Virus record (IMG/VR): IMGVR_UViG_3300017696_000015
Span: 1-16,727 of that record
Strand: one strand, 5' to 3'
DNA: 16,727 nucleotides
Within the stretch, counting starts at the first letter, position 1, and every line of letters starts with the position of its first letter. Positions 167 through 14,245 of this stretch are shown one piece after another. Below the pieces are notes generated by a model. That model made no database searches. It worked only from the letters and a program-made list of their open reading frames with translations, and had not been told where the DNA came from. A program made the position numbers and the translations under genes.

Positions 167-445
167 TTATTCATTAATACATAACTTATATTTTCCATCT
201 TTATAGATAAAAATATAATAAGCATTTTTTATATAACGTTTTAAATCTTCTTCATTTAAAGTTAATCTTTTTATATATTCATCTTCTATTTTTTCCCATG
301 TCTTTTCATCTACATTTATGGCATATTCATCTACAATATCATCATCTGTTATAACACTTATGACGTCTAGATATAAATCGTAATTTCCTTCTTTTAAACA
401 TTCTAAATTCTCAATTTCTTTATCTATAATTACGATAAATGTCAT
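167..445 (-). CDS. Acidic hypothetical protein (~92 aa)
   Basis: ORF track 167..454. The ATG at 445 overlaps the TGA stop of the upstream acetyltransferase (ATGA coupling), so it is the likelier start. Confidence 0.7.
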   Translation of the reverse strand: MTFIVIIDKEIENLECLKEGNYDLYLDVISVITDDDIVDEYAINVDEKTWEKIEDEYIKRLTLNEEDLKRYIKNAYYIFIYKDGKYKLCINE

Positions 446-903
446 CTTAACCACTTCACAAAAATTGGATGACCAGTTCTATTTGTTTTCCCAACTTCTT
501 GAAATCCAGCTTTCTTGTACAAAGCGTTAGAATGGTCTGGAAATCCTAAAGTCCATAAAACCTCAAATCCATCATTCTTTAACTTCTGAGCTAAATCAAT
601 TAGAAAATTTACAGCATAATCTCCTGGAGCTGTTTTGGTAACTCTTCTAATAAAATAACTTCTGTCAAATGGAATTTTGTATTGTTGAGCTATATAACGA
701 AAAGGTGTGTTGTCGTGAAGCCAAGCTACAGCTACTATAAAATCTTCCTCACCGTCGTTAGCTATGTACATAAAATATCTAGAATTTTTTCCAGCTCCGC
801 CACCCATGGGCATTCCTTGAGAATGATAATAATTTATTAACATTCTAACAAATTTTATTAACTCTTTACTTTCTGCTTCCTCAATTCTGAATTTCAATTC
901 CAT
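442..903 (-). CDS. GNAT-family acetyltransferase (SIRV2 ORF154-like)
   Basis: C-terminal GNAT signature SNALYKKAGF. Divergent from the ORF488-like gene, as I recall for rudiviruses. ATG at 903 gives 153 aa and lies 18 nt after a TATA-TGTCAT promoter. Confidence 0.8.
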   Translation of the reverse strand: MELKFRIEEAESKELIKFVRMLINYYHSQGMPMGGGAGKNSRYFMYIANDGEEDFIVAVAWLHDNTPFRYIAQQYKIPFDRSYFIRRVTKTAPGDYAVNFLIDLAQKLKNDGFEVLWTLGFPDHSNALYKKAGFQEVGKTNRTGHPIFVKWLR

Positions 904-1037
904 ACATTTTGAAATCAAATTATGACAAATATATACTTATTGTGTAAAATATAATTAGGACAAATTGTAAAGCTAATATACATAATATTGTATATTAGAC
1001 TTGTATTTTATATTAACATTTTGAGAATATTTCAATT

Positions 1038-2438
1038 ATGGGAAGAAGAAAAGGAAATAGAAATATAGCGTCTATGAAATATCATCTGTATAATAAAGTC
1101 ATAAATAGAAAAAATTTCCCAGCTTTTTCTGTAATGTTTAACGCTGGAGTTGAATCCGTTCTTCCAACTCCTCTCGAGAATTTACAAATTCCGCCAGGCT
1201 TTAATACGAATTACGGAATTGCTTATGCTACAATTATTTCATCTTTACTTTCAGCGTTAAATAATCTAGCAATTTCTACGCTTAATCCGAATACAAATGT
1301 GCAAAGCTTTCTACAATTAGGACAAAGCCCGATATTTGGTCAAACTTCTGGAATTGATTTCGTTAATAAATCTACACAACTTTACGATTATTATGTAGAC
1401 CTTTGCAAAATTTTATATCAGCCAGCAGTATTTGATGAAACATATTTTGACCTCTCAGTTTTCCAGCCAGCTTTAACAATTGAAAATAGAAATGATGCAT
1501 GTAAAAAACTAGAGAAATATTTTGATAGTCTAACAACTTCAAACGTTTCTATAAATTTACAAAATCTAGGTTTTGGATATACAAATATTCCAAATGTAGA
1601 CAATTATTCACTTTCCAATATACAAAATACTGGAATTTCAGATTTATTGAATACTCTTAATTTGAATTTCAATAATCTTCCAGATTTAGCTAAATTTGTA
1701 ATCTCATTTATTCCTAACTTGAACAAGATAATAGATAACGGATTTGCTTTAGATGTCGGATGGTTAGACAGATGTGTTTTAGCCCCAGAAATTGAGGAAA
1801 GTTCAAATTACAAAGTTCAGCTTAAGAACGGCATGATTTTGCAAAACTTTGCAAATGTTTTCGGTATGATTTTAGACTATACTCCTCTAGATTTGGCAAT
1901 TCTAATTCCAGAATTTAATCCAAATGATGTAACTTTAGACAATTTAATCTCTATTTTGTCAGCTGATAAAACTGTAATTTCTATTTTCGGAAATCTATTC
2001 AAACTTCATTTGTATGACCCATCCCCAGGAGGAATAAATATAACTTATAGTTCAGAAATTGAAAATTATGCTGTTACATATCAACAATATCTTCATGTAC
2101 AGAAAGTTGTAAATAGAAAATATTCTAACGTTTGGTATGCAAAAATGATAGCCTCAGCAATCTTAGAAATTGCCAGATATCCATATCAGCAAAATTACAG
2201 TTATCAAACTGGAAAAAGGACACTTCCTTATAACGAATTTTTGAATTATTGGAAAACAAAATGGAGTTTTTACGGAATTTCAGATGAAGATTTACAATTT
2301 GCTCAAGAATATGGAGAAAAATTACAAGGACAGGCAAAAATAGAAAATTCCTTAAAATTAGCTCAAAAAAGTGTAAAAACTAAAGAATATAAACCAATTT
2401 TCTATTACAAAAACTTTAAAAATATAGCAAATAGATAG
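1038..2438 (+). CDS. Rudiviral minor structural protein (SIRV2 ORF488-like)
   Basis: 466-aa ORF with basic N-terminus MGRRKGNRNI, repeated FDETYFDL / LDVGWLDR / LDYTPLDL motifs, and matching size and synteny. Confidence 0.75.
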   Translation: MGRRKGNRNIASMKYHLYNKVINRKNFPAFSVMFNAGVESVLPTPLENLQIPPGFNTNYGIAYATIISSLLSALNNLAISTLNPNTNVQSFLQLGQSPIFGQTSGIDFVNKSTQLYDYYVDLCKILYQPAVFDETYFDLSVFQPALTIENRNDACKKLEKYFDSLTTSNVSINLQNLGFGYTNIPNVDNYSLSNIQNTGISDLLNTLNLNFNNLPDLAKFVISFIPNLNKIIDNGFALDVGWLDRCVLAPEIEESSNYKVQLKNGMILQNFANVFGMILDYTPLDLAILIPEFNPNDVTLDNLISILSADKTVISIFGNLFKLHLYDPSPGGINITYSSEIENYAVTYQQYLHVQKVVNRKYSNVWYAKMIASAILEIARYPYQQNYSYQTGKRTLPYNEFLNYWKTKWSFYGISDEDLQFAQEYGEKLQGQAKIENSLKLAQKSVKTKEYKPIFYYKNFKNIANR

Positions 2439-2451
2439 AAAAAGTGAGAAT

Positions 2452-2565
2452 ATGATAGTTAGAAAGAAAAAAGAATATAATAAAGACCCGAATACTTATA
2501 ATGGAAAATTTTTAGTTCATCCAAAATTAATAAAAAAGAAAATTTTGGAAATTTTAATTAACTAA
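2452..2565 (+). CDS. Small basic peptide, 37 aa (not in ORF track)
   Basis: Hand translation MIVRKKKEYNKDPNTYNGKFLVHPKLIKKKILEILIN*, with a GTGA SD-like element upstream. Confidence 0.4.
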   Translation: MIVRKKKEYNKDPNTYNGKFLVHPKLIKKKILEILIN

Positions 2566-2583
2566 ATTACAAAAGTGATAGTT

Positions 2584-2706
2584 ATGAGAATTGTGAAAAT
2601 TGGAGAAGATTATTTTCTTGAGATAAGGAGTAAGGAAGAATTAGAGAAATTAAAAGAGGATATACTTAGGGAAATTGAAGAGAAAGAAAAAAGAAAAACA
2701 AGTTAA
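2584..2706 (+). CDS. Small charged protein, 40 aa (not in ORF track)
   Basis: Hand translation MRIVKIGEDYFLEIRSKEELEKLKEDILREIEEKEKRKTS*. GTGA SD-like element upstream, purine-rich coding bias, T-runs downstream. Confidence 0.55.
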   Translation: MRIVKIGEDYFLEIRSKEELEKLKEDILREIEEKEKRKTS

Positions 2707-2815
2707 ATTTTTTAAATTTTTTACATAAACAATCAACAAAGCAATATTCATTATATTTTCAATATGGTATATTGGGATTGTATTTTTTTATTTAAGATTT
2801 AGTAAAAAAATAATC

Positions 2816-3184
2816 ATGACATATAAAGATGAATTTTCAAATATCTTCGGTCCCGTAAGAATTGCATTAGACAAGATTAGGGAACTAGAAGCTCGTGGTC
2901 AAATTTATGGATTATCTCGTTATTTACCTAATTCAATTATTGTTTTAAAAAATATACAATTTCCTATGATTGTAGATTTATATATTCCAGGATTTACATT
3001 TTATTTCCAGTTTTTGATAGTAAAAGATTCGAAAACAAACATGATGGAAATAGCAGATTTTCGCGTAGTTTATCCTCAGCCTTATGCAAAACAAGTGGAT
3101 TCTTTACAACAAAAATTCAAAGAAAAAGAAGATTTGAATTTAGATAATTTGGAAGATGAATTAGAGGGATTAGAAGATGAGTGA
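2816..3184 (+). CDS. Conserved rudiviral hypothetical protein (SIRV2 ORF110-like), acidic tail
   Basis: 122-aa ORF located downstream of the ORF488-like gene. Confidence 0.65.
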   Translation: MTYKDEFSNIFGPVRIALDKIRELEARGQIYGLSRYLPNSIIVLKNIQFPMIVDLYIPGFTFYFQFLIVKDSKTNMMEIADFRVVYPQPYAKQVDSLQQKFKEKEDLNLDNLEDELEGLEDE

Positions 3185-3398
3185 GGTCACTCTTATTCTT
3201 ACAATTTTTTCTACATTTATAACTACATTATTCGCAATTGTCCAACTTTATCTCAAAATCAAACAGGCTCTAAAAGATGCAGTTAGAGAAATTGTGAATT
3301 CCGAATTAGAAAATCTAAAAATTCAAATTGAGGAATTAAAAATGGCACAGAATGAACTTAGAAAAGAAATAGAAGAATTGAAAAAGAAATTAAGCTGA
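3177..3398 (+). CDS. Small membrane-anchored coiled-coil protein
   Basis: N-terminal hydrophobic helix (VTLILTIFSTFITTLFAIVQLYL) followed by a heptad-rich tail. Overlaps the upstream gene. Confidence 0.75.
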   Translation: MSEVTLILTIFSTFITTLFAIVQLYLKIKQALKDAVREIVNSELENLKIQIEELKMAQNELRKEIEELKKKLS

Positions 3399-3452
3399 AA
3401 TTTCAAAACATTTTATATTTGTCCTATTTTACTTTTTTATTTAAGAAGGGAT

Positions 3453-3653
3453 ATGGTGAAAGAAATAGACTTAATAAAAATCGAAATTCTTCTACAATTG
3501 CAATTAGGTCTAATTGAGGAAATTCATGATAATGAAAAATTTACAGAAGATGACGTGATGATAGCTCTAGAAATGATTAAAAATTTATCTGATGAAATTA
3601 GTAAAGATATATCTGTTTTGTTAAAACAAAATAAAGAAAACAAGAATAAATAA
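3453..3653 (+). CDS. Hypothetical helical protein, 66 aa
   Basis: ORF track. TTTATATTTGTC promoter at ~3412-3423 and AAGGGA upstream of the ATG. Confidence 0.7.
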   Translation: MVKEIDLIKIEILLQLQLGLIEEIHDNEKFTEDDVMIALEMIKNLSDEISKDISVLLKQNKENKNK

Positions 3654-3662
3654 AAAAGATAA

Positions 3663-3980
3663 TTATAATTTTTTAACTAAATCTCTTATCAAATTCTTAT
3701 CTGAATTTGTGAGCTTTAATTCTGAATCGTTTAGAATTTTTGTACTTCCCGCCTCTTTTACTAATATCGCTAAATCTCTATGCAATAATCGTGACCTATT
3801 TGGTCTAATGTGATAGAATTCCAAATGTATCGATAGTCTACCAGTTTTCATATTGCATATTGGACATCTGTAATTCTCAAAATGTTTTTCCATATGTCTC
3901 TTAAAACTTCTCTCATTTTCTAATTCTGTTTTGCAAATTGTACAATAAAATCTTTTTGGAATTCCTTTTATAGCTCCCAT
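3663..3980 (-). CDS. Double C2H2 zinc-finger protein (paralog 1, 105 aa)
   Basis: CTIC-x12-HMEKH and CPIC-x9-HLEFYH. Confidence 0.85.
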   Translation of the reverse strand: MGAIKGIPKRFYCTICKTELENERSFKRHMEKHFENYRCPICNMKTGRLSIHLEFYHIRPNRSRLLHRDLAILVKEAGSTKILNDSELKLTNSDKNLIRDLVKKL

Positions 3981-3998
3981 ATTTCATCACTTCCAAAA

Positions 3999-4316
3999 TC
4001 ATAATTTTTTCGAGAAATACCAAATCCTTTCTTTTTCATGTCTTTCTAATTTTATACCCAATTCATTTAAGATTTTTGTACTTCCAGCTTCCTTAACAAG
4101 TATTGCTAAATCTCTGTACAACAATCTTGAACCGTTTGGTTTAATATGGAAAAGTGTAATATGCTTAAACAAATCTCCAGTTGCAAATAGACATAAAGGA
4201 CATCTTATTTTATCGTAATGTTTTTTCATATGTCTCTTAAATTCTTTTGCACTTACAATTACTGTTTTACAGATTGGACAATAATATTCCTTTTTTGTAC
4301 CTTTACCTATTCCCAT
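3999..4316 (-). CDS. Double C2H2 zinc-finger protein (paralog 2, 105 aa)
   Basis: CPIC-x12-HMKKH and CPLC-x9-HITLFH. ATG at 4316 gives the same length as paralog 1 and follows a TTTATAAATGTCAT promoter. Confidence 0.85.
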   Translation of the reverse strand: MGIGKGTKKEYYCPICKTVIVSAKEFKRHMKKHYDKIRCPLCLFATGDLFKHITLFHIKPNGSRLLYRDLAILVKEAGSTKILNELGIKLERHEKERIWYFSKKL

Positions 4317-4370
4317 AAAATATATTATTTTATATGACATTTATAAATATCATTTTACTTTTCGATTTTT

Positions 4371-5378
4371 TTATTCCAGAAATCTTGTATATAGATTATT
4401 AATATCATATTTCTTTGCTAATTCTTTTAAATTCTTACTTCTTTCTTCTCTATCTTGTAATTCTATAGCTATTAATATCGCATTTATCATATCTTGAATA
4501 TCAAACTTGTGAATTCTCCATTTTTGACCTTGAGTTTTGTCATAATATTCCTCGACTTCTGAAGATTTTATCAAAAGATTCCACTGCCATGATGTAAATT
4601 CATCAAATGGGGGCATAAGTTGATGAATAATTGGAGTTCCCATAGCCATACTTTCTAATACTGGCATTCCAAAACCTTCTGTCCCAGACGGAACTATCAT
4701 ATAGTCCATAACTCTATAAAATGCAAAAATATATTCTCTAGGATTTAGCCCAAATTCGCTAACAAAATGTACATTTCCAGGAACTTCCAAATCTTTAAAT
4801 TGTTTATGGGAAATTACAAAAAAGTGAACTTTCTTAGCCAAATCTGGAGCTTTTGTATTTAATTCTTGAAAAACTTTTATCATTAAGTCCATATTTTTTC
4901 TCTTTGTCATTCCTGAAACTATTCCAAATTTCACAGTATTTGGGAAATCTCTTTCTAACTTTTGTTTGAGTTGTGGAGATAATTGTTCTGCTTTTTCTAC
5001 AACTTCAAAATTCACGCCATGAAAAACTGGCAAATCTGTTTCTAGTCCAACTTGTTGTAAATTTTGAGCTGAGAATTTAGAATTTGGAATAAATTTTATG
5101 TCTTTCAACAAATATTGATTTACGATATTTAGATTTGGAATTCCATCACATGTAGTATAGAAATATTTCTTCCCTTTGAATTGATGATAAGCTAGAAGAT
5201 ATGGATTTAATGACGGCGGATGAAATGGAACAAAAATTACAAGTTTTTCAGATTGTGGAATTTGATATGGATTTGTTACAACTGTCACATTTTCTCCATT
5301 TTTCCTCAAAACATAAGCTATATCTTCAGCTACATTTTTTATAGATGAATAATTCATAGTTAAAATTGTGGTTTTCAT
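4371..5378 (-). CDS. GT-B fold (GT4-like) glycosyltransferase, SIRV ORF335 homolog
   Basis: 335 aa with the E-x7-E motif in PSGTEGFGMPVLESMAMGTP. Located next to MCP. Confidence 0.92.
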   Translation of the reverse strand: MKTTILTMNYSSIKNVAEDIAYVLRKNGENVTVVTNPYQIPQSEKLVIFVPFHPPSLNPYLLAYHQFKGKKYFYTTCDGIPNLNIVNQYLLKDIKFIPNSKFSAQNLQQVGLETDLPVFHGVNFEVVEKAEQLSPQLKQKLERDFPNTVKFGIVSGMTKRKNMDLMIKVFQELNTKAPDLAKKVHFFVISHKQFKDLEVPGNVHFVSEFGLNPREYIFAFYRVMDYMIVPSGTEGFGMPVLESMAMGTPIIHQLMPPFDEFTSWQWNLLIKSSEVEEYYDKTQGQKWRIHKFDIQDMINAILIAIELQDREERSKNLKELAKKYDINNLYTRFLE

Positions 5379-5392
5379 AAAAGTTTTATAAT

Positions 5393-5402
5393 TGTCATGA
5401 CA
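5393..5402. promoter_or_regulatory. Palindromic TGTCATGACA shared by overlapping divergent TATA-GTC promoters
   Basis: Plus strand TTTTATAATTGTCAT and minus strand TTTTTTAATGTCAT, inside a 36-bp intergenic gap. Confidence 0.65.
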
Positions 5403-5414
5403 TTAAAAAATTCC

Positions 5415-5585
5415 ATGGGTCTGTTCTTATACGAATGCCCATACTGTAAAAAAATCTATAAAACAGTTGGCAGTATGAGAAGTCATTTAAGAAAATATCA
5501 CGGAATTTCTAGAATGGATAATGTAAAAAGAATTTCAACAAGAACTTTTGAATATATTGAAACAAAAACTGAAAATGACGATTAA
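5415..5585 (+). CDS. Small C2H2 zinc-finger protein (SIRV ORF55-like)
   Basis: YECPYCKKIY...LRKYH. ATG at 5415 is downstream of the promoter, whereas the track start at 5397 lies within it. Confidence 0.8.
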   Translation: MGLFLYECPYCKKIYKTVGSMRSHLRKYHGISRMDNVKRISTRTFEYIETKTENDD

Positions 5586-5649
5586 TTTTAAATTAATAAA
5601 TAGAAAAAAAGAAAAAAGAAAAATAGCTTATAAGGAAATCTATAGTTTT

Positions 5650-6054
5650 TTAGCTTACGTATCCGTTAGGAGACCCAGTTATTATATTAGTTACTGCATC
5701 TAGGATTTCTGGATTTGCATTAAACGCTGATATATAATATGCCTTTAATCCAGCTATCATATTTGTGAGGGCAGGTCCAGACCCTAATCTGTTTAAAGCT
5801 CTAGCAATCTTTAAACCATAACCCTGATAAATTGCCCTATTAGGTCCAGTTACACCGTATTCAGTTAATACTGCAGCAACTTGTTCATTCACACTGGTGA
5901 ACTTTGGAACGTTTGTCTGATAGTTTTCTTGGGCAATTGGAGCTACATTAGACAATATCGTGTTAGCGACAGTTGGATTTGAAAATGCTGTAAACTTTGC
6001 ATTCCATTTAGCAAACCTTTGGGAATAACTTCTTGGTGTATGCCCCTTCGCCAT
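5650..6054 (-). CDS. Rudivirus major capsid protein (ORF134)
   Basis: 134 aa, MAKGHTPRSYSQRFAKW...ITGSPNGYVS, recognisable as the SIRV/ARV coat protein. Confidence 0.97.
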   Translation of the reverse strand: MAKGHTPRSYSQRFAKWNAKFTAFSNPTVANTILSNVAPIAQENYQTNVPKFTSVNEQVAAVLTEYGVTGPNRAIYQGYGLKIARALNRLGSGPALTNMIAGLKAYYISAFNANPEILDAVTNIITGSPNGYVS

Positions 6055-6085
6055 TTCTCTTCAAATTACAATTTTTTTTCCTAAA

Positions 6086-6097
6086 TAATAAATTTTC
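6086..6097 (-). promoter_or_regulatory. BRE-TATA of MCP gene (GAAAATTTATTA)
   Basis: 32 nt upstream of the MCP ATG. The identical 12-mer precedes PVAP. Confidence 0.65.
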
Positions 6098-6148
6098 ACG
6101 TTCTATAGCAAATATAATGTATATTATTTGTTCAAATTGGAGAAAAAT

Positions 6149-6236
6149 TGAAAAACAAAGTAATATTCGTAATATAAGATATATTGCAATTTAGATTTGT
6201 CACGTCACTGAAAAACAAAGCAATATACATAATATT
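6149..6236 (+). repeat. Imperfect direct repeat with 60-bp period (TGAAAAACAAAGYAATATWCRTAATAT), each unit holding an AATAT-N5-ATATW palindrome
   Basis: Units at 6149-6175 and 6209-6235, with an inverted third core at 6111-6130. Confidence 0.75.
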
Positions 6237-6362
6237 ATGTATATAAGTTGTTAATGTAAAAAGTTTGATAATTAGAATAATTTCGAGAATATATAGACAT
6301 ATAATATATTATATCTAAAGTAATACAAAACTATAAAATTGACATATTGTGAAATTTAAACT

Positions 6363-6668
6363 ATGGAAAATTTGACAATTATTGAATGTAGAAAATATAC
6401 AGTTCAAATTTTTAAATGGCTTAAAAGTCGTTACTCTGATAACGTATACGATTTTCTAGTTCTAGAAGAAGATGACTTGATAACTATAAAAATCAAAATG
6501 AATGTATCGATAAAATTTTATGAAAAAAGAGGAATTGGAATTTTGAATTATATAGTTAAAACTTTCAAACGTCCAGAATATATAAAGATAAATTGGAGAT
6601 ATAATAGAAATATGTTTAATATTACCGTTTTTTGTGGTCAAAAAAGTCAAGATATAAATTTGTCATAA
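6363..6668 (+). CDS. Hypothetical protein, 101 aa
   Basis: ORF track. TATA-like CTATAAAA about 30 nt upstream. Confidence 0.7.
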   Translation: MENLTIIECRKYTVQIFKWLKSRYSDNVYDFLVLEEDDLITIKIKMNVSIKFYEKRGIGILNYIVKTFKRPEYIKINWRYNRNMFNITVFCGQKSQDINLS

Positions 6669-6692
6669 AACGAAAAATGAAAATGAGGTAAT

Positions 6693-6956
6693 ATGGGTAG
6701 ATTAGCTTTTAGATTATATATTTCTATAATGCTTTCAATTGCAATATTTAATTTACTTTATATATTTTCTGAAGGAATTTTGTCTAAAAATTTGCAAAAT
6801 ATAGTTTTATATTCCGTAATTATATCAATTTTTTTAGCAATATTTTTTACCTGGACAATAGATATGATAATCCATCAAGATATAAAAATTTATGAACTTG
6901 AATTAGAAATTGAAGATTTAAAAAGAAAAATAAATTTGTTAGATAATGAAGAATGA
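6693..6956 (+). CDS. Two-TM membrane protein with C-terminal coiled coil
   Basis: Two hydrophobic segments, then IYELELEIEDLKRK. GAGGT SD and TATAAATTTGTCAT promoter. Confidence 0.75.
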   Translation: MGRLAFRLYISIMLSIAIFNLLYIFSEGILSKNLQNIVLYSVIISIFLAIFFTWTIDMIIHQDIKIYELELEIEDLKRKINLLDNEE

Positions 6957-6968
6957 GTTTGATGAAAT

Positions 6969-7211
6969 ATGGATAGAGAATGTAGAGAAATAATAGTTTT
7001 CCTGATTTTTTTAGCTTTAATATTTTTAGCTTTAATAGTTATGTCATTAGGAATTATTACGAAAAATATAGAAATAGTTATAATATCAACATTTTTTGCA
7101 TCTGGAATTATTGCACTTTTGTATACTATAATTTATGACATTTTTACAGATATTTATGACGAAATTGATGAATTAAAAACAGAAATTGAAAGATTGAAAA
7201 GAAAACGGTAA
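6969..7211 (+). CDS. Two-TM membrane protein with C-terminal coiled coil (probable paralog)
   Basis: Same architecture as the preceding gene, with IYDEIDELKTEIERLKRK. Confidence 0.75.
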   Translation: MDRECREIIVFLIFLALIFLALIVMSLGIITKNIEIVIISTFFASGIIALLYTIIYDIFTDIYDEIDELKTEIERLKRKR

Positions 7212-7256
7212 ATAAAAATATATTTGTCATAAAACGTTTTTTCAAATTGACCAAAT

Positions 7257-7799
7257 ATGATTTTAAGCGATAGAGATTTAAAATATTATCTAGAAAAAGA
7301 ATGGATAAAAATAGTACCATTTGATGAAGAAATAGTTAGAGAAAACGGTGTAGACTTAAGAATTGGAAATCAATTTGCCAGACTAAAAAAGACAAACAAA
7401 GTTTTTGAACCAGGCGATAATATAGAAGATTTTTACGAAATTATAAATAAAAATGACATTATAGTTCAGCCACATGAACATCTCTTAATGACAACTGACG
7501 AATATATAGAATTACCAAATGACATTATGGCATTCGTGAACTTACGTTCTACATATGCTAGATTAGGAATTTCTATACCGCCAACAATTGTAGATGCTGG
7601 ATTTAAAGGTCAGCTTACGATAGAAATTGTAGGGTCAGAATTCCCAGTAAAACTTGAATCTGGACAGAGATTTTTACATCTAATTTTCGCTAAAACATTA
7701 TCTCCAGTAGAGAAACCGTATCATGGGAAATATCAAAAACAAAATAATGTAACTCTTCCAAAATTTGAAACATATAAAATTAAGAATTATATAAGTTAA
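7257..7799 (+). CDS. dcd: dUTPase / dCTP deaminase family protein
   Basis: [39 protein letters not shown] and PYHGKYQ motifs of the trimeric DCD/DUT family. Confidence 0.92.
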
Positions 7800-7836
7800 A
7801 AGAAAAAAGTTTAATAACTTAAAAAATATTTTTTTA

Positions 7837-8013
7837 TTACTGTGGAATTGTTTCTATTTTAATTTCTTTATCTTCATTATCTGACATATGTTTTTCTAGA
7901 TATTCTATAATTGCATTTCTAATGACATCTGACCTATAAAGTCCATTTTTTTCAGCATAACTGTCTAATTTGTTTAGAAGTTCTGGTTCAATTTTTACAC
8001 TTATTGGTCTCAC
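7837..8013 (-). CDS. Ribbon-helix-helix (CopG-like) regulator, 58 aa (not in ORF track)
   Basis: GTG start overlapping the svtR stop (GTGA). MRPISVKIEPELLNKLDSYAEKNGLYRSDVIRNAIIEYL is a textbook RHH pattern. Confidence 0.85.
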   Translation of the reverse strand: MRPISVKIEPELLNKLDSYAEKNGLYRSDVIRNAIIEYLEKHMSDNEDKEIKIETIPQ

Positions 8014-8183
8014 TTTACTCCTCTCTTCTGTAAATATTCTGTTATAGCTTGTTCTATAGCTTCTGTAATTGTTATATCTTGTTCAGCACAATATTTCTTT
8101 AGTTTGATTTTGAGATTTTTGTCCATATTTATTCCAAAAACTACCTTTTCAGATTTCGATTCAGTTTTTATTTTTTCCGTCAT
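8010..8183 (-). CDS. svtR: SvtR RHH transcriptional repressor (SIRV ORF56b homolog), 57 aa (not in ORF track)
   Basis: Hand translation MTEKIKTESKSEKVVFGINMDKNLKIKLKKYCAEQDITITEAIEQAITEYLQKRGVK matches the recalled SvtR pattern VFGIxMDKxLKxxLKxYCA...AIExAIxEYLQKR. Confidence 0.9.
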   Translation of the reverse strand: MTEKIKTESKSEKVVFGINMDKNLKIKLKKYCAEQDITITEAIEQAITEYLQKRGVK

Positions 8184-8240
8184 TTTTTATCAATTTATGT
8201 ATATTTATTATGACATATTTATATGTTTCGAATTTTTGCG

Positions 8241-8252
8241 GAAAATTTATTA
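8241..8252 (+). promoter_or_regulatory. BRE-TATA of PVAP gene (GAAAATTTATTA)
   Basis: 30 nt upstream of ATG 8282, identical to the MCP promoter 12-mer. Confidence 0.65.
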
Positions 8253-8281
8253 CTAAGCAATTTGTTCAATATAAAATTGAA

Positions 8282-8578
8282 ATGTCTATACTGCCATATG
8301 CATTAGAAGGATTTCTAGTATTGATGGGTACATTAGTAGGAAGTTATGTCGTTGGAGAAATAGTACATCTTTATAACGAAAAACAGGCAAATGAGGCATT
8401 TAGGACAGCTATTGACCAAATGGCAAAATCTACAATTGTAACTGCAGAAAGTATAAAAGATACCGCTACACTTGGAATAAATTCGCTTTTGAATATGGAT
8501 ACACTTAGGGATGTAAATTCATTAGCACAAAAGAAAGCAGAACAAAATACAAATTCACAAACTTCAGCATCTAAGTAA
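8282..8578 (+). CDS. Virus-associated pyramid protein PVAP (SIRV2 P98 / STIV C92 family), egress/lysis
   Basis: Exactly 98 aa from ATG 8282. N-terminal TM helix, then GEIVHLYNEKQ...AIDQM.KST...ESIKDT...GINSLLNMDTLRDVNSLA. Confidence 0.93.
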   Translation: MSILPYALEGFLVLMGTLVGSYVVGEIVHLYNEKQANEAFRTAIDQMAKSTIVTAESIKDTATLGINSLLNMDTLRDVNSLAQKKAEQNTNSQTSASK

Positions 8579-8579
8579 T

Positions 8580-8927
8580 CTAGACATTCTGGGTTTTTAA
8601 CATATAAGTTAATACTTTTTTTATATCTTTTTTTGTTTTTGGAACTAATTGTATATTTATATCACTATGAGAAGGCATATGTTTATGAACTCTGGAATAA
8701 TCAAGTTTCTTATTCGTAAAAACGAGAACATGATAATGTAGCCCATGGAATTTTGTTGTATATTCTTTCACAGAAAAAACATGTGAATCTAAGTCATGAT
8801 TATAGACATATTGCCGAAATTTTTTATAGATTTTTGCTGTATCTCCATATCGATAATTCGTAGAAATTGTAATAAAATAAGTATAACTGTAAAGAAAGTG
8901 ATAGTTAAAAACTTTTTTACAGTCCAT
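8580..8927 (-). CDS. rep: HUH-superfamily Rep nicking protein (SIRV ORF119 family)
   Basis: Motif I FITIST, HUH motif GLHYHVLV, catalytic YxxK (TYMLK). Confidence 0.9.
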   Translation of the reverse strand: MDCKKVFNYHFLYSYTYFITISTNYRYGDTAKIYKKFRQYVYNHDLDSHVFSVKEYTTKFHGLHYHVLVFTNKKLDYSRVHKHMPSHSDINIQLVPKTKKDIKKVLTYMLKTQNV

Positions 8928-8998
8928 GAATGTAAATGAAAATCTGACATTTAAATGTATATGTCACGTTTATATCAAGGTTAGGAGTATAAAAAAAT

Positions 8999-9271
8999 AT
9001 GAGAAGACAAAGAAATAAATATATTGAGGTAAGAATTCCACATAAATATCAATCTATTTTTTATGAAAAAAGAGAACAAATCAAACAAGAAATAGATAAA
9101 TTGTTAAATCAACAAACTGAATTCAAATTGATAGAAAGTCAAGAAGTTTATGACGACAGAGCATTTTTTACAGTAGACGAATTATACTACGACAAATTAG
9201 AACAATTGGCAAGAAAATACAATACAAAAATTCCAAGACTTATAAGGTCTTTGTTCTTTAAGTTACTCTAA
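8999..9271 (+). CDS. Putative DNA-binding protein with RHH-like repeats, 90 aa
   Basis: YIEVRIP and FFTVDELYYDKLEQLARKYNTKIPRLIRSL resemble RHH strand-helix-helix units. Confidence 0.6.
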   Translation: MRRQRNKYIEVRIPHKYQSIFYEKREQIKQEIDKLLNQQTEFKLIESQEVYDDRAFFTVDELYYDKLEQLARKYNTKIPRLIRSLFFKLL

Positions 9272-9431
9272 ATCTTTTTTTCTTTTATCTCTCAATTCTC
9301 AACTCAAATATTTAAAATATAATGTATATTGCTTTTTGTGTTTATAATAAAAATATTGAAAAATATGCTAACTTATAAGTTTGTTAATATTTAAATTTGT
9401 CATAATATAATATTTTTATTAGGGGATGTAA

Positions 9432-9845
9432 ATGGCGTCCCTAAAAGAAATAATAGATGAGTTAGGTAAACAAGCTAAAGAACAAAACAAAATTGTTTCA
9501 AGAATTCTAAAGATAAAAGGTATAAAAAGAATTGTAGTACAATTAAACGCTATACCAAATGGAAATTCTGTAAGATATAGCATGACAATTCATTCACAAG
9601 CAAACTATAGGAAACAGATAGGAATTACAGCAAATGATGCAGAAGATTTGAGATTAATCAGTGAATTCCTATCTAAATATGCTGACTTACTTAACGAATA
9701 TATAAAGTTTTCTCCTAGAAATGGAAATAATGTAAGAGAGGAAGAATTAGAAGTTGAAAATACAGAAGAAGAAGAACAAGAAGAACAAAAACAAGAGAAA
9801 TCACAAAAGAAACAAAGTAAAAAGAATGTGGAAGATGAATTTTAA
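9432..9845 (+). CDS. ssDNA-binding protein (SIRV2 gp17/ORF131-like) with acidic disordered tail
   Basis: MASLKEIIDELGKQAKE...YRKQIGITANDAEDL core with an E/Q/K-rich C-terminus. First gene of the gp17-18-19 cluster. Confidence 0.88.
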   Translation: MASLKEIIDELGKQAKEQNKIVSRILKIKGIKRIVVQLNAIPNGNSVRYSMTIHSQANYRKQIGITANDAEDLRLISEFLSKYADLLNEYIKFSPRNGNNVREEELEVENTEEEEQEEQKQEKSQKKQSKKNVEDEF

Positions 9846-9870
9846 AATGTCATAAAATATCATTTTTTTT

Positions 9871-11178
9871 ATGAACGGTAACTTTCAATTCCTGGAAAAA
9901 GTTAAAGAACATTCTTTTTTTTATAACCCAAGAGATACAGAAAGAGTTCTCAATATAATTCTTTCTGGTAAACAAATTGATGATAAGAAAAAGATTGAAA
10001 TTCTTAAAGCTTATAAACGCGGAATAGATCAGCAATATTTTTCAGCGACTTTGCCATATTATGATGAGGTAAAATTTATCTCTAAAATAACAAATTTTAA
10101 AGTAAAAAATGACAAAATAATTGCTAGATTTCAAAATGGGTTTATAGCAAGTTTTGACCCACATTATATAGCAGATAATCCTGATGATTTCTATAATTTA
10201 ATAACTTCTTTTATGTTTGTCAAGATTAGAAAAGGGTCTAACGGCTGGTATATTAGCGATATTTATTCTATAGAACCGCCGAATAATTATGAAATTGCTA
10301 AAGAACTTTTTGACATAGCTAATCAAGAACATCAAACATATGCTCTTCTACTCCAAGCTTTCGGATACGACCCAACTAAAATGGAAATTCAAGATATCTT
10401 TCTATATCTTCCTAGATTATTCCCACTTTTTAAATCACCAATTACGAAAAGGCAAATCAATTATATAGAAATTTCTAATCGTGGAACTGGAAAAACTACA
10501 ACTTTTATGATATTACAAGAAGTGTTTAATTTCCGTTATTATACAGAAACACCAACATATGCAAATCTAGTATATGATGCCAGAAATAATATGTATGGTG
10601 CCGTCTTTCTTTCTAACGGTCTAATTTTTGATGAAATTCAGAATTGGAAAGATGGATATTCCATAAAAGAATTAGGAGCAATAAATGCCACTCTTTCAAC
10701 TGGTCTGGAAAATTGTGTCTGGACTAGAGGAGCTGGAACAGAATCAAAATCCTCAACTATTCAGAAATGTATACCGATTATTTACGCTGGAAATCCATAT
10801 TCTATGACTCTAAACAGATTAAGAACTCCAGATGTAGAAGATTATCTTGTAAACTATCAAATTTTTACTTCTGCAATTCTCGATAGAATTCATATTATAC
10901 AATTAGCAATTAAAAAAACTTATGAAAAAATTGTCAATTCCAGAGTTCTATATCCGTCTATCTTGAAAGCTCTAGTAGAACTAATTCAGCAGAAGATAAA
11001 CAGTATCACGAATTATGTAATTTGTGATAACTTAGAATCTAGAAGACAAGAACAAGCTATAGATATACAAATACTCTTACAGGCTCTCGACATAGATTTA
11101 CAAATTGGACAGAGAACGAAGGAAGAAATTTGTAGACAAATCATCAATTTCATGAGATTTTCAAATTTAGGTGAGTGA
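9871..11178 (+). CDS. AAA+ ATPase / ssDNA-annealing protein (SIRV2 gp18/ORF436-like)
   Basis: 435 aa. Walker A NRGTGKTT, Walker B LIFDE, sensor AGN, Arg finger LDR. Confidence 0.9.
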
Positions 11179-11180
11179 GA

Positions 11181-11822
11181 ATGAATTACGAAGATTTAGT
11201 TAGACAAAGTTTCAAAATAAAATATCCTGAAGACTTAATTTTCCCTTCTGAAGTTGGAATATGTTTCAGAAAGTCATATTTCTCTAGGAAATTTGAGTTT
11301 GAAAAGGGAATAAATGAACTTGTACTTGATCTTGGAGAACAACATCATTTGAGAATAGAGAATTATTTTACTGAGAAATTAGAATGTAAAAGTGAAATTG
11401 AGGTAAAAGGAGAAATAGAAGGTCTAAAAATTTCTGGTAGAATAGACTTGATTTGTGGAAACGATTTACTAGAAATAAAAACAATTTCCAACAATTATTT
11501 TAATATCAAAGAATATCATCTATACCAAATTGCAATATATTACTATTTATTGAAATTACAAAATTACAAAATTGATAATGTTTATATCATATATTTAAAT
11601 AGAATAAATAGAGAAGTTAAACAATTTCAAATTGAGAAAAATGTATTAGAAGAATATATTCAAAAAGCTATAGATTGGATTAAGAAATTTAAAGAATATT
11701 TGAAACTAACAGACTATAAAAACATTCCAGGAGCTAACAATTATTTATGTAAAAATTGTGATTTTAAATCTAAATGTTCTGGTTCTGTTTTGGATTATTT
11801 ACAATCAACTGACAAAAAGTAA
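11181..11822 (+). CDS. cas4: Cas4-like (RecB-family, Fe-S) ssDNA exonuclease (SIRV2 gp19/ORF207-like)
   Basis: CFRK, GRID..LLEIK, QIAIY and [10 protein letters not shown] motifs. AGGTGA SD upstream of ATG 11181 (alternative GTG 11175). Confidence 0.92.
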
Positions 11823-11917
11823 TATTCCTTATATTATTAATATGACATATTCGTCATGGAAAATGCAAATTTAAAAACCTTTTTATTTGTCATAACACAA
11901 CATTTTTATTGAGAAAT

Positions 11918-12412: not shown

Positions 12413-13174
12413 ATGAAAGTTACTTTAGTTTCATATACTCCAGACGGAGAAAAAGTTATTGCAATTGCATCAAAAATGAGTAGGTCAAGAAAAGGATGGG
12501 AATATCATAAAGAAAAAATGACAGATGATGAAATAGAACTATGGATATCTGATGCTATAATTCATGGATATTGGTCTGTACTTGAACACAGTGTATACAC
12601 TTTCTCAATTGAAAGAATTTCTAGAATTGTTTCACATCAACTTGTAAGACATAGAATTGCATCATATACTCAAATGAGCCATAGATTTGCAAAGCCAATT
12701 GAAGAATATTATCAGCCAATTATACCGTCATCTACAGAAAAAAGAGCTAAAGAAATTGTAGAAAAAGCTTATAGCGATTCATATAAACGTTATTATGAAC
12801 TCCTAGAAGCCGGTGTACCAGAAGAAGATGCTCGTTACGTCTTACCAAACGGCATAAATACAAATATTGTCGTTACCATGAATGCTAGAGAACTTTATAA
12901 CTTCTTTGCCTTACGTTTATGTTCTAGAACTCAGTGGGAACTTCGACAATTAGCATGGAAGATGCTCGAAGAAGTGAAGAAAGTACATCCTAGACTATTC
13001 CGTTATGCTGGACCTAATTGTATAATTCATGAGAACTTTATACGTGTCACGCCGATAACTCTTGACTCAATAAACGAGAAGACGGAGTTTATATCGAAAA
13101 GATGTATAGAAGGAGTTCCAAAAGAAGGAATTTATAAATGTATACAAAATTCAAAAAAAGGTGAAGAATTTTGA
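12413..13174 (+). CDS. thyX: Flavin-dependent thymidylate synthase ThyX
   Basis: Signature RHRxxSxxQxSxR ([13 protein letters not shown]), plus [26 protein letters not shown] and QWELR. AGGAG SD before ATG 12413. Confidence 0.96.
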
Positions 13175-13503
13175 AAGTAAAAGATGCAAAAATTCTTTTT
13201 GATTTTCTAAGGAGGAATAATCTACAATTTAGATATTATGAATATAAGAACAATCTATACGATATACATATTACTAATTTGACATTAATTGATTTATCAT
13301 TTTCTGATTTTGATAATCTTGTAGAAATGAATTTTCTGATAAACAATATTGATTTTAAATTTTTACATATCTTAAAAACAAGTTTAGATGTAGAATTTGA
13401 TGTTGGAGATTTACATAATCATGATAAAATAACATTAAAGAAAGTAAGAATAACATGGGATAGAATTCAAGGACTAGAAATTTTATGGGAAAGTAAAAAA
13501 TAA
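13171..13503 (+). CDS. Hypothetical protein, 110 aa
   Basis: TTG start overlapping the thyX stop (TTGA), with an AGGTGA SD. Confidence 0.7.
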
Positions 13504-13746: not shown

Positions 13747-13778
13747 ATTGCCATCAATATATAATATGTATTTTTTTG

Positions 13779-13807
13779 TATTTAAAATTTTCTTTATGAG
13801 TTTACAT
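13779..13807 (-). promoter_or_regulatory. Extended promoter copy 1
   Basis: ATGTAAACTCATAAAGAAAATTTTAAATA, 33 nt upstream of ATG 13746. Confidence 0.65.
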
Positions 13808-13935
13808 TAACATCTTACGTTTTTTAAAATCTCAAATTTTAGGAATAATATAACAAGCAGGAGAAAAATTGAAGAAAAAAATAGAAGGAAAAAGGGGTAA
13901 CCCAAATCAGAAAAATTGAGTAGGAAAAAAAGTGT

Positions 13936-14160
13936 TCAGTCAGAAGATTGCGAATTTTGATGTTTTACAAGAAAAGAAAAATGCATGTTTGCTATATTTT
14001 CATCATATCCTGAAAAGAAAAATATTCTTTTTGATTCTGTCTGTATATATACTGCAATTCTTTGTTTCTGGCAACAATTACACTTTGCATAAATTACATT
14101 ACCCTCTTGTTTTACTTGTACAAAGTTGTGATATGTAACATTTATAACTTGGAATTTCAT
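13936..14160 (-). CDS. Small Cys-containing hypothetical protein (~74 aa), candidate anti-defence protein
   Basis: MKFQVINV...IYAKCNCC. ATG 14160 lies 31 nt after the extended promoter. Confidence 0.7.
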   Translation of the reverse strand: MKFQVINVTYHNFVQVKQEGNVIYAKCNCCQKQRIAVYIQTESKRIFFFSGYDENIANMHFSFLVKHQNSQSSD

Positions 14161-14190
14161 TTTTATCAATTTATATTTACTCAATCTACA

Positions 14191-14219
14191 TTTATAAATT
14201 TTTCGATAAACTTTTACGT
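14191..14219 (-). promoter_or_regulatory. Extended promoter copy 2
   Basis: ACGTAAAAGTTTATCGAAAAATTTATAAA. Confidence 0.72.
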
Positions 14220-14245
14220 ATCGATTTATCGTTTCTATAAAAAAA

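What the first reader, a model, noticed from the sequence alone, without database searches (positions are those of the whole stretch)
969..11835. Seven dispersed copies of an intergenic palindromic element AAAGY-AATAT-WCVTW-ATATT
Seen, core positions: 975-989 AATATACATAATATT; 2743-2757 AATATTCATTATATT; 6111-6125 (reverse) AATATACATTATATT; 6162-6176 AATATTCGTAATATA; 6222-6236 AATATACATAATATT; 9316-9330 (reverse) AATATACATTATATT; 11821-11835 AATATTCCTTATATT. Five are directly preceded by AAAG(C/T), and the other two by close variants. All sit in intergenic gaps (the last overlaps the cas4 stop), upstream of the structural gene, the ORF110-like operon, MCP, the SSB operon and the thyX operon. The spacer and one flank are conserved, so the element is oriented rather than random AT palindromy. 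Inference: it is an operator or activator site of a genome-wide regulon (candidates are the RHH, wHTH or C2H2 proteins encoded here), or a replication/packaging signal.
Basis: partly seen in the sequence, partly recalled or inferred. Interest (0 to 1): 0.7.

Follow-up and report, generated by a model that had tools for sequence, protein, structure and literature searches.

The report
Conserved upstream promoter element of rudiviruses
The seven AT-rich palindromes are real copies of a short DNA signal that sits at a fixed distance upstream of the TATA box of a set of structural and other genes in rod-shaped archaeal viruses, almost certainly a docking site for a transcription regulator that has not yet been identified.

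Summary
All seven sites are at the stated coordinates. Chance would give 0.05-0.4 matches where 7-9 are seen.

The window is a whole 16.7-kb metagenomic rudivirus contig, about 79% identical to the Yellowstone SIRVs. Its core is ATATACATWATAT, usually followed by WATGTATA, which together make a 22-bp palindrome. There are 6-9 exact core copies per genome in SIRV1-3 and SIRV4/7/9/10/V60. SSRV1 and MRV1 carry a variant, ATATTCATAATAT. ARV1 and SMRV1 have none.

The element is oriented. It starts about 31 nt (or about 40 or about 60 nt) upstream of a TATA-like box, and 62-72 nt upstream of the ATG of the capsid gene, the ORF488-like and ORF110-like genes and, in relatives, ORF399, ORF564, ORF269 and ORF335. 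This geometry fits an upstream regulator-binding site, more likely for an activator.

In SIRV1 the orthologous capsid-promoter copy lies exactly where the host protein Sta1 gave its upstream footprint. However, the conserved letters are not those of the published Sta1, SvtR or aCcr1 motifs, so the binder is open.

The SSB and gp20/thyX copies are gains specific to this lineage.

Replication, packaging and hairpin readings are not supported.

Moderate interest: a new member of a known kind.

The parts
976..995 (+). Site 1. Core 13-mer ATATACATAATAT (976-988) plus an imperfect right arm TGTATAT. It lies 62 nt upstream of the ATG of the 466-aa ORF488-like structural gene (1038). Read on the other strand, it starts 60 nt from the TATA+GTC box of the divergent p158 gene.
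   Evidence: orthologous copy in SIRV7, SIRV4, SIRV9, SIRV10 and V60
1006..1015 (+). TATA-like box TTTTATATTA of the 1038 gene, 30 nt after the start of site 1
919..935 (-). TATA+GTC core promoter (TATATATTTGTCATAAT on the minus strand) of the divergent p158 gene, whose real start is probably the ATG at 903
2744..2756 (+). Site 2, ATATTCATTATAT, 72 nt upstream of the ATG of the ORF110-like operon (2816). A T-rich TATA-like box lies at 2783-2796 (+39).
   Evidence: orthologous copy at the same 72-nt distance in SIRV1, SIRV2, SIRV3, SIRV4, SIRV7, SIRV9, SIRV10 and V60
6112..6124 (-). Site 3, ATATACATTATAT, the capsid-gene (MCP) proximal copy, 70 nt upstream of the MCP ATG (6054). The BRE/TATA stretch GTGAAAATTTATTAT lies within 6080-6096.
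   Evidence: invariant across 10 genomes of four genera (alignment A1)
6163..6184 (.). Site 4, a degenerate middle copy (plus strand ATATTCGTAATAT 6163-6175; minus strand ATATATCTTATAT 6172-6184). It is a recent local duplication found only in this contig and lies 60 nt from each neighbouring copy.
   Evidence: family D17, 83% identity, 60-nt spacing; absent from sister contig L018
6223..6244 (.). Site 5, the perfect 22-bp palindrome ATATACATAATATTATGTATAT. It is the distal copy in the divergent MCP/p101 region, 120 nt from site 3.
   Evidence: orthologous distal copy in SIRV4, SIRV7, SIRV9, V60 and L018
9317..9329 (-). Site 6, ATATACATTATAT. It starts 115 nt upstream of the SSB ATG (9432) but points away from that gene. 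The SSB core promoter (TATA+TGTCATAA) is at 9387-9405.
   Evidence: present only here and in sister contig L018
11822..11834 (+). Site 7, ATATTCCTTATAT. It begins at the last base of the cas4-like stop codon, 96 nt upstream of the ATG of the operon made of the gp20-like, gp21-like RHH, thyX and p110 genes (11918). The core promoter TTTTTATTTGTCATAA is at 11880-11895 (+58).
   Evidence: present only here and in L018

Best explanation
The element is a double-stranded DNA binding site for a sequence-specific transcription regulator. It lies just upstream of the BRE/TATA core of a defined subset of rudiviral promoters.

Anatomy. The full module is about 40 bp. It has a loosely conserved CAA near -15 to -13, an A-rich 5' flank (ACAAAGC in this virus, CAACTC-like in others), the core ATATWCNTWATAT, and a 3' arm (W)ATGTATA or TATAT that in the best copies completes a 22-bp palindrome.

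Genes served. In this window: the major capsid gene, the ORF488-like structural gene, the ORF110-like operon and, through lineage-specific gains, the SSB and gp20/gp21/thyX operons. In relatives: also ORF399, ORF564, ORF269 and ORF335.

Proposed mechanism. A dimeric factor bound here, about 20-25 bp upstream of the TATA box (or one or three helical turns further), helps TBP/TFB recruitment at promoters whose BRE is weak. It therefore acts as an upstream activating sequence. Extra copies spaced 60 nt apart in front of the capsid gene would boost or cooperatively stabilise binding.

Shown: the motif, its enrichment, its orientation, its fixed geometry and its conservation.
Inferred: protein binding, the activating sign, and the identity of the factor. 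The factor could be the host Lrs14-family protein Sta1, another host factor, or a small viral RHH or zinc-finger protein.
For: - Enrichment: 7-9 copies against 0.05-0.4 expected, almost all of them in the 15.6% of the window that is intergenic. SIRV2 shows the same enrichment, 9 against 0.05.
- Family-wide presence: 6-9 exact core copies per genome in SIRV1, SIRV2, SIRV3, SIRV4, SIRV7, SIRV9, SIRV10 and V60, and a variant in SSRV1 and MRV1.
- Fixed geometry: the distance from element start to the ATG is 62/63, 70, 72 or 81 nt. A TATA-like box starts at +30 to +32 (38 cases) or +39 to +41 (15 cases), and GTC lies at +41.
- Phylogenetic footprint: in the capsid promoter of 10 genomes from four genera, the element and the TATA box are the invariant blocks (A1).
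- Specificity: the 21-mer occurs in 34 IMG/VR stretches. Every one that could be checked is rudiviral. No Sulfolobales genome among 185,579 species carries it.
- Experimental link: the 30-bp Reg2 oligo of the Sta1 study is the core-promoter footprint of SIRV1 promoter 134. The second footprint is described as about 30 nt upstream, and the element starts exactly 30 nt upstream of Reg2. The promoter-399 bait used in that study contains two copies. SIRV1 promoters were weak in a pure TBP/TFB/RNAP system and were stimulated by cell extract or by Sta1 (PMC1635249).
- Independent detection: the repeat finder recovers 55-59-nt paralogous modules around sites 2, 5, 6 and 7.
- Persistence: sister contig L018, about 80% identical, keeps sites 6 and 7.
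Against: - No binding or transcription data exist for this virus, and I could not see the Sta1 footprint figure. The overlap is inferred from the oligo sequence and the stated distance.
- Sta1 is now regarded as an AT-rich, largely non-specific Lrs14-type nucleoid protein (PMC11841832).
- Its proposed consensus occurs about 10-11 times per kb and fits only 2 of the 7 window sites in register. A footprint there does not explain the conserved C and the exact letters.
- Sites 4, 5, 6 and 7 are not at the canonical 31-nt distance, and site 6 is reversed.
- Activation as against repression is inferred from position only.
- Transcription start sites for this virus are not mapped. The TATA boxes are assigned by sequence and by analogy.
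Confidence: 0.75

Rival explanations
1. The element is simply the Sta1 binding site already described. The host Lrs14-family protein Sta1 binds it as a dimer and activates these promoters, so nothing new is needed.
For: Sta1 was pulled down with SIRV1 promoters 134 and 399, both of which contain the element. It protected a roughly 20-bp region about 30 nt upstream of the core promoter of P134, exactly where the element lies. It activated P134 in vitro (PMC1635249). The SIRV1 copy fits ATNT-N8-WNAT.
Against: - The Sta1 consensus is met about 10-11 times per kb, and only 2 of 7 window copies meet it in register.
- The TTATT-CANGNA-TTATT motifs essential at sso0777 are absent.
- Sta1 bound the Reg2 oligo with a Kd of about 10 uM and is now viewed as a non-specific binder of AT-rich DNA.
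- Promoter 56 also bound Sta1 but has only a partial right arm.
- The invariant C and the exact 13-mer are not explained by AT preference.
Confidence: 0.25
2. The element is an operator for a repressor, viral or host, that keeps these mostly structural genes silent early in infection. Repression would work by spreading from the upstream site over the BRE and TATA box, as proposed for the RHH proteins SvtR and AvtR.
For: - The window encodes three Pfam-supported RHH proteins and a C2H2 protein.
- RHH repressors of archaeal viruses are reported to bind upstream high-affinity sites and to oligomerise towards the TATA box (PMC5569661).
- An SvtR-like gene is detected in the SIRVs, SSRV1 and MRV1, but not in SRV, SBRV1, SMRV1 or ARV1. 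This roughly mirrors the abundance of the element.
- The palindromic and tandem architecture suits dimers of dimers.
Against: - The published SvtR consensus and its main target, the gp30 promoter, do not contain the element.
- The gp21/aCcr1 motif AGTATTA is absent from all copies.
- The phyletic match rests on tblastn with proteins of about 57 aa in 14 genomes.
- A position upstream of the BRE is more typical of archaeal activators.
- The same single 14-kDa host protein was recovered from infected and uninfected extracts.
Confidence: 0.2
3. The element is a replication, recombination or packaging signal, acting as a cruciform or hairpin or as a site for Rep or capsid protein, and is not a transcription element.
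For: It is palindromic and dispersed, with three copies 60 nt apart next to the capsid gene. Two SIRV2 copies lie about 900 nt from each genome end, at positions that mirror each other (905 and 34534 of 35450).
Against: - The copies keep a fixed distance and orientation to TATA boxes and start codons.
- Single-strand hairpins are only -0.5 to -5.8 kcal/mol at 37 C, and 4 of 6 are no better than shuffles. They would melt at the host's growth temperature.
- Most copies have a degenerate right arm, so conservation is of sequence and not of pairing.
Confidence: 0.04
4. The copies are only relics of promoter-module duplication, paralogous DNA with no selected function.
For: Paralogous modules of 55-59 nt surround sites 2, 5, 6 and 7. 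Site 4 is a recent local duplication.
Against: The core stays invariant while its flanks diverge, both among paralogs and among orthologs in four genera at about 70-80% nucleotide identity.
Confidence: 0.03

Closest known systems
Sta1-protected region 1 of the SIRV1 capsid-gene promoter 134 (Kessler et al. 2006, PMC1635249)
   Same: It is the same place. The SIRV1 ortholog of window site 3 starts 30 nt upstream of the Reg2 core-promoter oligo, where the upstream footprint is described. It lies upstream of the BRE/TATA and is linked to activation in vitro.
   Different: The published consensus, ATNT-N8-WNAT, is far looser than what is conserved, and only 2 of 7 window copies fit it. As far as I could read, the paper does not describe the 13-mer or 22-bp palindrome, its 6-9 copies per genome or its conservation across genera.
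Early-gene (anti-defence gene) regulatory sequence of rudiviruses and lipothrixviruses (Bhoobalan-Chitty et al. 2024, PMC11065993)
   Same: It is a virus-specific conserved sequence shared by a set of promoters in the same viruses. It was found by comparing upstream regions and is presumed to be a regulator site.
   Different: That motif surrounds a strong BRE plus a TTTAWATA box in front of small genes near the genome ends. The window has its own copies of that type at 13754-16697. The present element lies upstream of weaker core promoters of central structural and other genes and has a different sequence.
SvtR and AvtR operators (RHH regulators of SIRV1 and AFV6; review PMC5569661)
   Same: They are imperfect inverted repeats in archaeal virus promoters. 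High-affinity sites can lie well upstream of the TATA box.
   Different: The consensus sequences do not match (ATnnTTCAAnAnnnnnAAAATG and ATnnTnnTAnnACnTT). The main SvtR target promoter, gp30, lacks the element.
aCcr1 / SIRV2 gp21 site AGTATTA (PMC9976892)
   Same: It is a short AT-rich site bound by a core rudiviral RHH protein. gp21 binds the SIRV2 gp17 and gp20-21 promoters, the same two operons that gained the element in this lineage.
   Different: AGTATTA is absent from all seven copies. The SIRV2 gp17 and gp20 promoters lack the element.
Upstream activating sites of archaeal activators such as Ptr2 of Methanocaldococcus (as discussed in PMC1635249)
   Same: Palindromic sites placed immediately upstream of the BRE/TATA, from which TBP recruitment is stimulated.
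   Different: The host, the protein family and the sequence are unrelated. For the rudiviral element the activator is not identified.

Membership tests
Sta1 (Lrs14-family) binding site | Fits the proposed consensus ATNT-N8-(A/T)NAT | tested here: inconclusive
   Only sites 5 and 7 fit in register. The consensus itself occurs 10-11 times per kb in these genomes, so a fit carries little information.
Sta1 (Lrs14-family) binding site | Orthologous to a region shown by DNase I footprinting to be protected by Sta1 | tested here: met
   This holds for site 3 only. Alignment A1 places it on the SIRV1 element at 11072, which starts exactly 30 nt upstream of the Reg2 oligo. The overlap is inferred from the text because the figure was not available.
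Sta1 (Lrs14-family) binding site | Contains the TTATT / CANGNA / TTATT motifs shown to be essential at sso0777 | tested here: not met
   None of the seven sites contains this arrangement (PMC2175319).
Sta1 (Lrs14-family) binding site | Binds Sta1 specifically | not testable with these tools
   This needs EMSA or footprinting with wild-type and point-mutated probes.
SvtR operator | Matches ATnnTTCAAnAnnnnnAAAATG and occurs at the known SvtR targets (gp08 and gp30 promoters) | tested here: not met
   There is no exact match in SIRV1, SIRV2 or the window, and the near-matches do not coincide with the element. The gp30 upstream region has no element.
aCcr1 / gp21 site | Contains AGTATTA | tested here: not met
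   It is absent from all seven sites and their flanks.
Early anti-defence gene regulatory sequence | Purine-rich BRE plus a TTTAWATA box with conserved flanks, in front of small genes near the genome ends | tested here: not met
   The element has a different sequence and lies upstream of a separate TATA box. Modules of the early type occur elsewhere in the window, at 13754-16697.
Archaeal core promoter (BRE/TATA) | Lies about 25-35 nt upstream of the transcription start or leaderless ATG | tested here: not met
   The element starts 62-96 nt upstream of the ATGs, and a separate TATA-like box follows it at +30 to +60. Transcription starts are not mapped for this virus.
Upstream regulator-binding site (UAS or operator) of a viral regulon | Over-represented, intergenic, oriented, at a fixed distance from core promoters, and conserved in orthologous promoters | tested here: met
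Miniature mobile element or REP-like intergenic repeat | Terminal inverted repeats with target-site duplications, inserted without regard to promoters | tested here: not met
   The copies keep their register with TATA boxes. No flanking duplications were seen in the alignments of sites 6 and 7 with relatives that lack them.

The most novel reading that the evidence does not exclude
A still unidentified sequence-specific factor, possibly virus-encoded, reads this 13/22-bp element and defines a conserved regulon of middle or late genes (virion and DNA-metabolism genes) across at least four rudivirus genera. The element travels as a module of about 55-60 bp that can be duplicated in front of new operons. 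Here that has wired the SSB and the gp20/gp21/thyX operons into the regulon. If so, this would be the first defined upstream activating sequence and regulon for non-early genes of an archaeal virus.
Probability: 0.35. Interest if true: 0.65.

Novelty: new member of a known kind. Interest (0 to 1): 0.5.

Why it matters
How archaeal viruses time their gene expression is poorly understood. The only promoter class defined by sequence in rudiviruses so far is the early anti-defence class. This element marks a second, different promoter class that includes the capsid gene. It is conserved from the Icelandic and Yellowstone SIRVs to the Italian SSRV1 and MRV1.

It gives a precise and short bait for finding the regulator: wild-type DNA against C6/G17 mutants. 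It could also resolve whether the 2006 Sta1 footprint reflects specific recognition or general AT-binding. In practice it helps to annotate promoters, operons and true start codons in rudivirus genomes and metagenomic contigs. It also offers a defined regulatory part for Sulfolobales genetics.

Tried and rejected
- Hairpin or cruciform function. The ssDNA folds are weak, and 4 of 6 are no better than shuffles.
- SvtR operator. There is no consensus match, and the SvtR target promoter gp30 lacks the element.
- gp21/aCcr1 motif AGTATTA. It is absent.
- Early anti-defence promoter motif. It is a different sequence in a different place.
- Host regulon with identical sites. The 21-mer gave no Sulfolobales hit in one genome per species, only chance hits in AT-rich bacteria and unrelated archaea. 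Shorter or degenerate host sites could not be searched.
- Tandem Repeats Finder did not call the 60-nt periodic copies upstream of the capsid gene because they are too diverged. The repeat finder and a manual register did show them.
- Phyletic profiling of candidate regulators. It gave only a weak hint for the SvtR-like gene.
- Literature. No held paper contains the motif string together with Sulfolobus in a relevant context. I therefore cannot exclude that the element was already noted there. From memory, the 'virus-specific consensus element' of Kessler 2004 is the GTC after the TATA box, which I also see.
- The built-in promoter scan was not used because it models bacterial sigma-70 promoters.

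Full report
**What the window is.** The 16,727 bases are a complete metagenomic viral contig, IMGVR_UViG_3300017696_000015 (locus L017). It belongs to a rudivirus that is about 79% identical in nucleotides to the Yellowstone Sulfolobus islandicus rod-shaped viruses SIRV5, SIRV6 and SIRV7 over the conserved half of the genome. The gene order matches those viruses:
- p158 (gp34-like)
- the 466-aa ORF488-like structural protein
- the ORF110-like operon
- glycosyltransferase
- a C2H2 zinc-finger protein
- the major capsid protein (5650-6054, minus strand)
- the p101/dUTPase operon
- two RHH proteins, one of them SvtR-like
- Rep
- a 90-aa protein
- SSB, gp18 and a Cas4-like nuclease
- a gp20-like protein, a gp21-like RHH protein and ThyX
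- small genes of the terminal type

The small DNA-binding proteins were checked against Pfam and PHROGs.

**Checking the observation.**
- AATAT-N5-ATATT occurs 8 times against 0.41 expected.
- The oriented form ATATWCNTWATAT occurs 9 times against 0.09 expected.
- The strictest control resamples only the intergenic DNA, which is 19.5% GC and 15.6% of the window. It gives 7 observed against 0.05 expected, and none of 2000 resamplings reaches that number.
- Two matches lie inside genes, at 6609-6623 and 13233-13245. They lack either the spacer or the context, and I treat them as chance.
- Spacer positions C and T are invariant, and the 5' flank AAAG[CT] or a near variant is present, so the element is oriented.

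**What it really is.**
- The core is ATATACATWATAT. It is usually followed by WATGTATA(W)AG, and together these form a palindrome of about 22 bp.
- That palindrome is perfect at window 6223-6244, ATATACATAATATTATGTATAT.
- SIRV1, SIRV2 and SIRV3 (Iceland) and SIRV4, SIRV7, SIRV9, SIRV10 and V60 (Yellowstone) each have 6-9 exact core copies. SIRV2 has 9 against 0.05 expected.
- The Italian viruses SSRV1 and MRV1 carry a variant, ATATTCATAATAT, at 5-8 places, and ATATACAAAATATTATGTATAT in front of their capsid gene.
- SRV has 2 copies and SBRV1 has 1. ARV1 and SMRV1 have none.
- The window uses both the ATATAC form and the ATATTC form.
- The 21-mer ATATACATWATATWATGTATA occurs in 34 IMG/VR stretches. 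Every stretch that could be checked encodes rudiviral proteins.
- In one genome for each of 185,579 bacterial and archaeal species, the same 21-mer gives only 33 chance hits. None of them is in Sulfolobales.

**Geometry.** Anchoring all copies on the start of the element gives quantised distances.
- The ATG of the served gene lies at +62/63 (ORF399, ORF564, the USA ORF269 homologs, the ORF488-like gene), +70 (capsid), +72 (ORF110, Icelandic ORF269) or +81 (ORF335).
- A TATA-like box (TTTATTTW and similar) starts at +30 to +32 in 38 unique contexts and at +39 to +41 in 15.
- The trinucleotide GTC often follows the box, at +41.
- A third class has the box at +58 to +60. It includes window site 7, and site 1 as seen from the divergent p158 gene.
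- The loosely conserved CAA at -15 to -13 and the A-rich 5' flank extend the module to about 40 bp.
- Window sites 1, 2 and 3 have the canonical geometry, with boxes at 1006-1015, 2783-2796 and within 6080-6096.
- In an alignment of the capsid promoter from ten genomes of four genera, the invariant blocks are the element, the TATA box and a short stretch near the start codon. The flanks vary.
- The element is therefore not the TATA box. It lies directly upstream of the BRE/TATA.

**Which promoters carry it.** About five of roughly thirteen transcription units in the window carry the element.
- Most of the others use a TATA+TGTCATAA core alone.
- The small genes at the right end use a module of the early type, with GAAAAATTTATAAATG.
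- The genes served across the family are mainly virion and modification genes: capsid, ORF488, ORF564, ORF269 with the methyltransferase, ORF335, ORF110 and ORF399.

**Evolution of the copies.**
- Sites 1, 2, 3 and 5 have orthologs in the Yellowstone SIRVs, and site 3 has orthologs in all SIRVs.
- Sites 6 (upstream of SSB, reversed) and 7 (after the cas4-like stop, upstream of the gp20-like operon) have no counterpart in SIRV1, SIRV2, SIRV3, SIRV4, SIRV7 or SIRV9, and SIRV10 likewise lacks site 6. In those viruses the corresponding intergenic regions are about 40-60 nt shorter.
- Both sites are retained in the sister contig L018, which is about 80% identical.
- The repeat finder shows that sites 2, 5, 6 and 7 sit in paralogous modules of 55-59 nt (families D3 and I1). 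The element appears to spread by duplication of a promoter module.
- Upstream of the capsid gene the window has three copies exactly 60 nt apart on the minus strand (6124, 6184 and 6244). The Yellowstone SIRVs have two copies 60 nt apart.

**Link to experiments.** Kessler et al. 2006 (PMC1635249) reported the following.
- SIRV1 promoters were weak in a pure TBP/TFB/RNAP system.
- A 14-kDa host protein, Sta1, was pulled down by promoters 56, 134 and 399.
- Sta1 activated promoter 134.
- Sta1 protected two regions of about 20 bp in promoter 134, one in the core promoter and one about 30 nt upstream.

Their Reg2 oligo, described as a fragment of the core-promoter footprint, is AATTTATTAATTTAAAGAATAAAATTGATA. 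In SIRV1 the element starts exactly 30 nt upstream of it. The promoter-399 bait contains two copies. The upstream Sta1 footprint therefore very probably covers the SIRV1 ortholog of window site 3. This is an inference, because the figure is not available.

There are reasons not to equate the element with a Sta1 site.
- The proposed Sta1 consensus, ATNT-N8-WNAT, occurs 10-11 times per kb, and only 2 of the 7 window copies fit it in register.
- The motifs essential for Sta1 binding at sso0777 are absent.
- Sta1 is now grouped with the Lrs14-type nucleoid proteins that bind AT-rich DNA with little specificity.
- The invariant C and the exact 13-mer point to a more specific reader.

**Other candidate readers.**
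- The published SvtR consensus and its main target, the gp30 promoter, do not contain the element.
- The gp21/aCcr1 motif AGTATTA is absent.
- A crude phyletic profile shows an SvtR-like gene in the SIRVs, SSRV1 and MRV1 but not in SRV, SBRV1, SMRV1 or ARV1. That roughly follows the abundance of the element. The C2H2 protein is detectable only in the SIRVs. This is weak evidence.

**Mechanism proposed.** I propose a dimeric or higher-order regulator bound to the element, centred about 20-25 bp upstream of the TATA box, or one or three helical turns further.
- From there it assists TBP/TFB recruitment at promoters with weak BREs. The extra copies would raise occupancy at the capsid promoter.
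- Three things favour activation: the position upstream of the BRE, the weakness of these promoters in the pure in vitro system, and the stimulation by extract or Sta1.
- Repression by spreading from an upstream site, as proposed for SvtR and AvtR, remains possible.
- The replication, packaging and hairpin readings are disfavoured by the promoter-locked geometry, by the degenerate right arms and by the weak single-strand folds.

**Novelty and verdict.** The kind of feature is known: a regulator site in archaeal virus promoters. One copy was footprinted in 2006. I found no description of the conserved 13/22-bp element, its set of promoters, its fixed spacing or its conservation across genera in the papers I could read. 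I rate it a new member of a known kind, of moderate interest.

Noticed in passing
window 13754-13825, 14169-14234, 15307-15372, 16629-16694: Four copies of a 66-72-nt module (65-77% identical) lie upstream of small minus-strand genes at the right end. Read on the minus strand they contain GAAAAATTTATAAATG, a purine-rich BRE plus a TTTAWATA box. This looks like the early anti-defence gene promoter class described for rudiviruses (PMC11065993).
   Followed up: partly
window 6654-6701, 6930-6977, 7218-7265, 9377-9420, 11867-11910 and others: A second repeated promoter type is a TATA box followed directly by TGTCATAA about 32 nt before the ATG. It occurs in front of at least nine genes, including genes inside operons. 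The GTC matches what I recall as the 'virus-specific consensus element' of SIRV promoters.
   Followed up: partly
window 6299-6314: A different perfect 16-bp palindrome, ATATAATATATTATAT, sits about 30 nt upstream of the TATA box of the p101/dUTPase operon. SIRV1 and SIRV2 have ACTATATA-type repeats at the same place. It may be the site of another regulator.
   Followed up: no
window 11837-11851: Just after site 7, the minus strand reads AATATGTCATATTAA. This resembles the SSB-type TATA+GTCATA core promoter but faces back into the cas4-like gene. It could be a promoter fragment carried along with the inserted module or an antisense promoter.
   Followed up: no
window 9317-9329 (minus); L002 (SIRV1) 5317-5329, L003 (SIRV2) 8737-8749, L008 (SIRV3) 6584-6596: Some copies point into the 3' end of a convergent small regulator gene. 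In the window this is the 90-aa protein, and in SIRV1-3 it is SvtR. In each case the copy is followed by a purine-rich stretch ending in A-runs, which is the T-rich terminator of that gene on the other strand. Window site 6 is directly followed by TTTAAATA. Antisense transcription of the regulator gene is conceivable.
   Followed up: partly
window 442-918 (minus): The p158 ORF as listed starts with TTG at 918, but its TATA+GTC box lies at 919-935. The in-frame ATG at 903 lies 32 nt from the start of the box and is the more likely start codon.
   Followed up: partly
window 12413-13149: The thyX gene is 80.8% identical in nucleotides to that of Sulfolobus monocaudavirus SMV3, a virus of another family. 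The Yellowstone and Icelandic SIRVs gave no match over this region in the near-identity search (megablast) of the whole window. This suggests gene exchange between virus families.
   Followed up: no
window 3663-3980 / 3999-4340 and 6693-6956 / 6969-7211: There are two pairs of tandem paralogous small genes: p105/p113 (78% identical over 86 nt) and p87/p80 (both phrog_9310).
   Followed up: no
L003 (SIRV2) 19330, L009 (SRV) 14877, L010 (SBRV1) 17884, L011 (SMRV1) 16944, L079 (SSRV1) 9420, L080 (MRV1) 8804: An element-like 13-mer, ATATTCRTAATAT, lies inside or at the start of the Holliday-junction resolvase gene in SIRV1, SIRV2, SIRV9, SIRV10, V60, SRV, SBRV1, SMRV1, SSRV1 and MRV1 (no match in SIRV3, SIRV4, SIRV7 or ARV1), including SMRV1, which lacks the promoter element. 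It is conserved as coding sequence and should be masked in any motif count.
   Followed up: partly
L003 (SIRV2) 905-917 and 34534-34546: One exact copy of the 13-mer lies about 900 nt from each end of SIRV2, at positions that mirror each other, far from the promoters discussed here.
   Followed up: no
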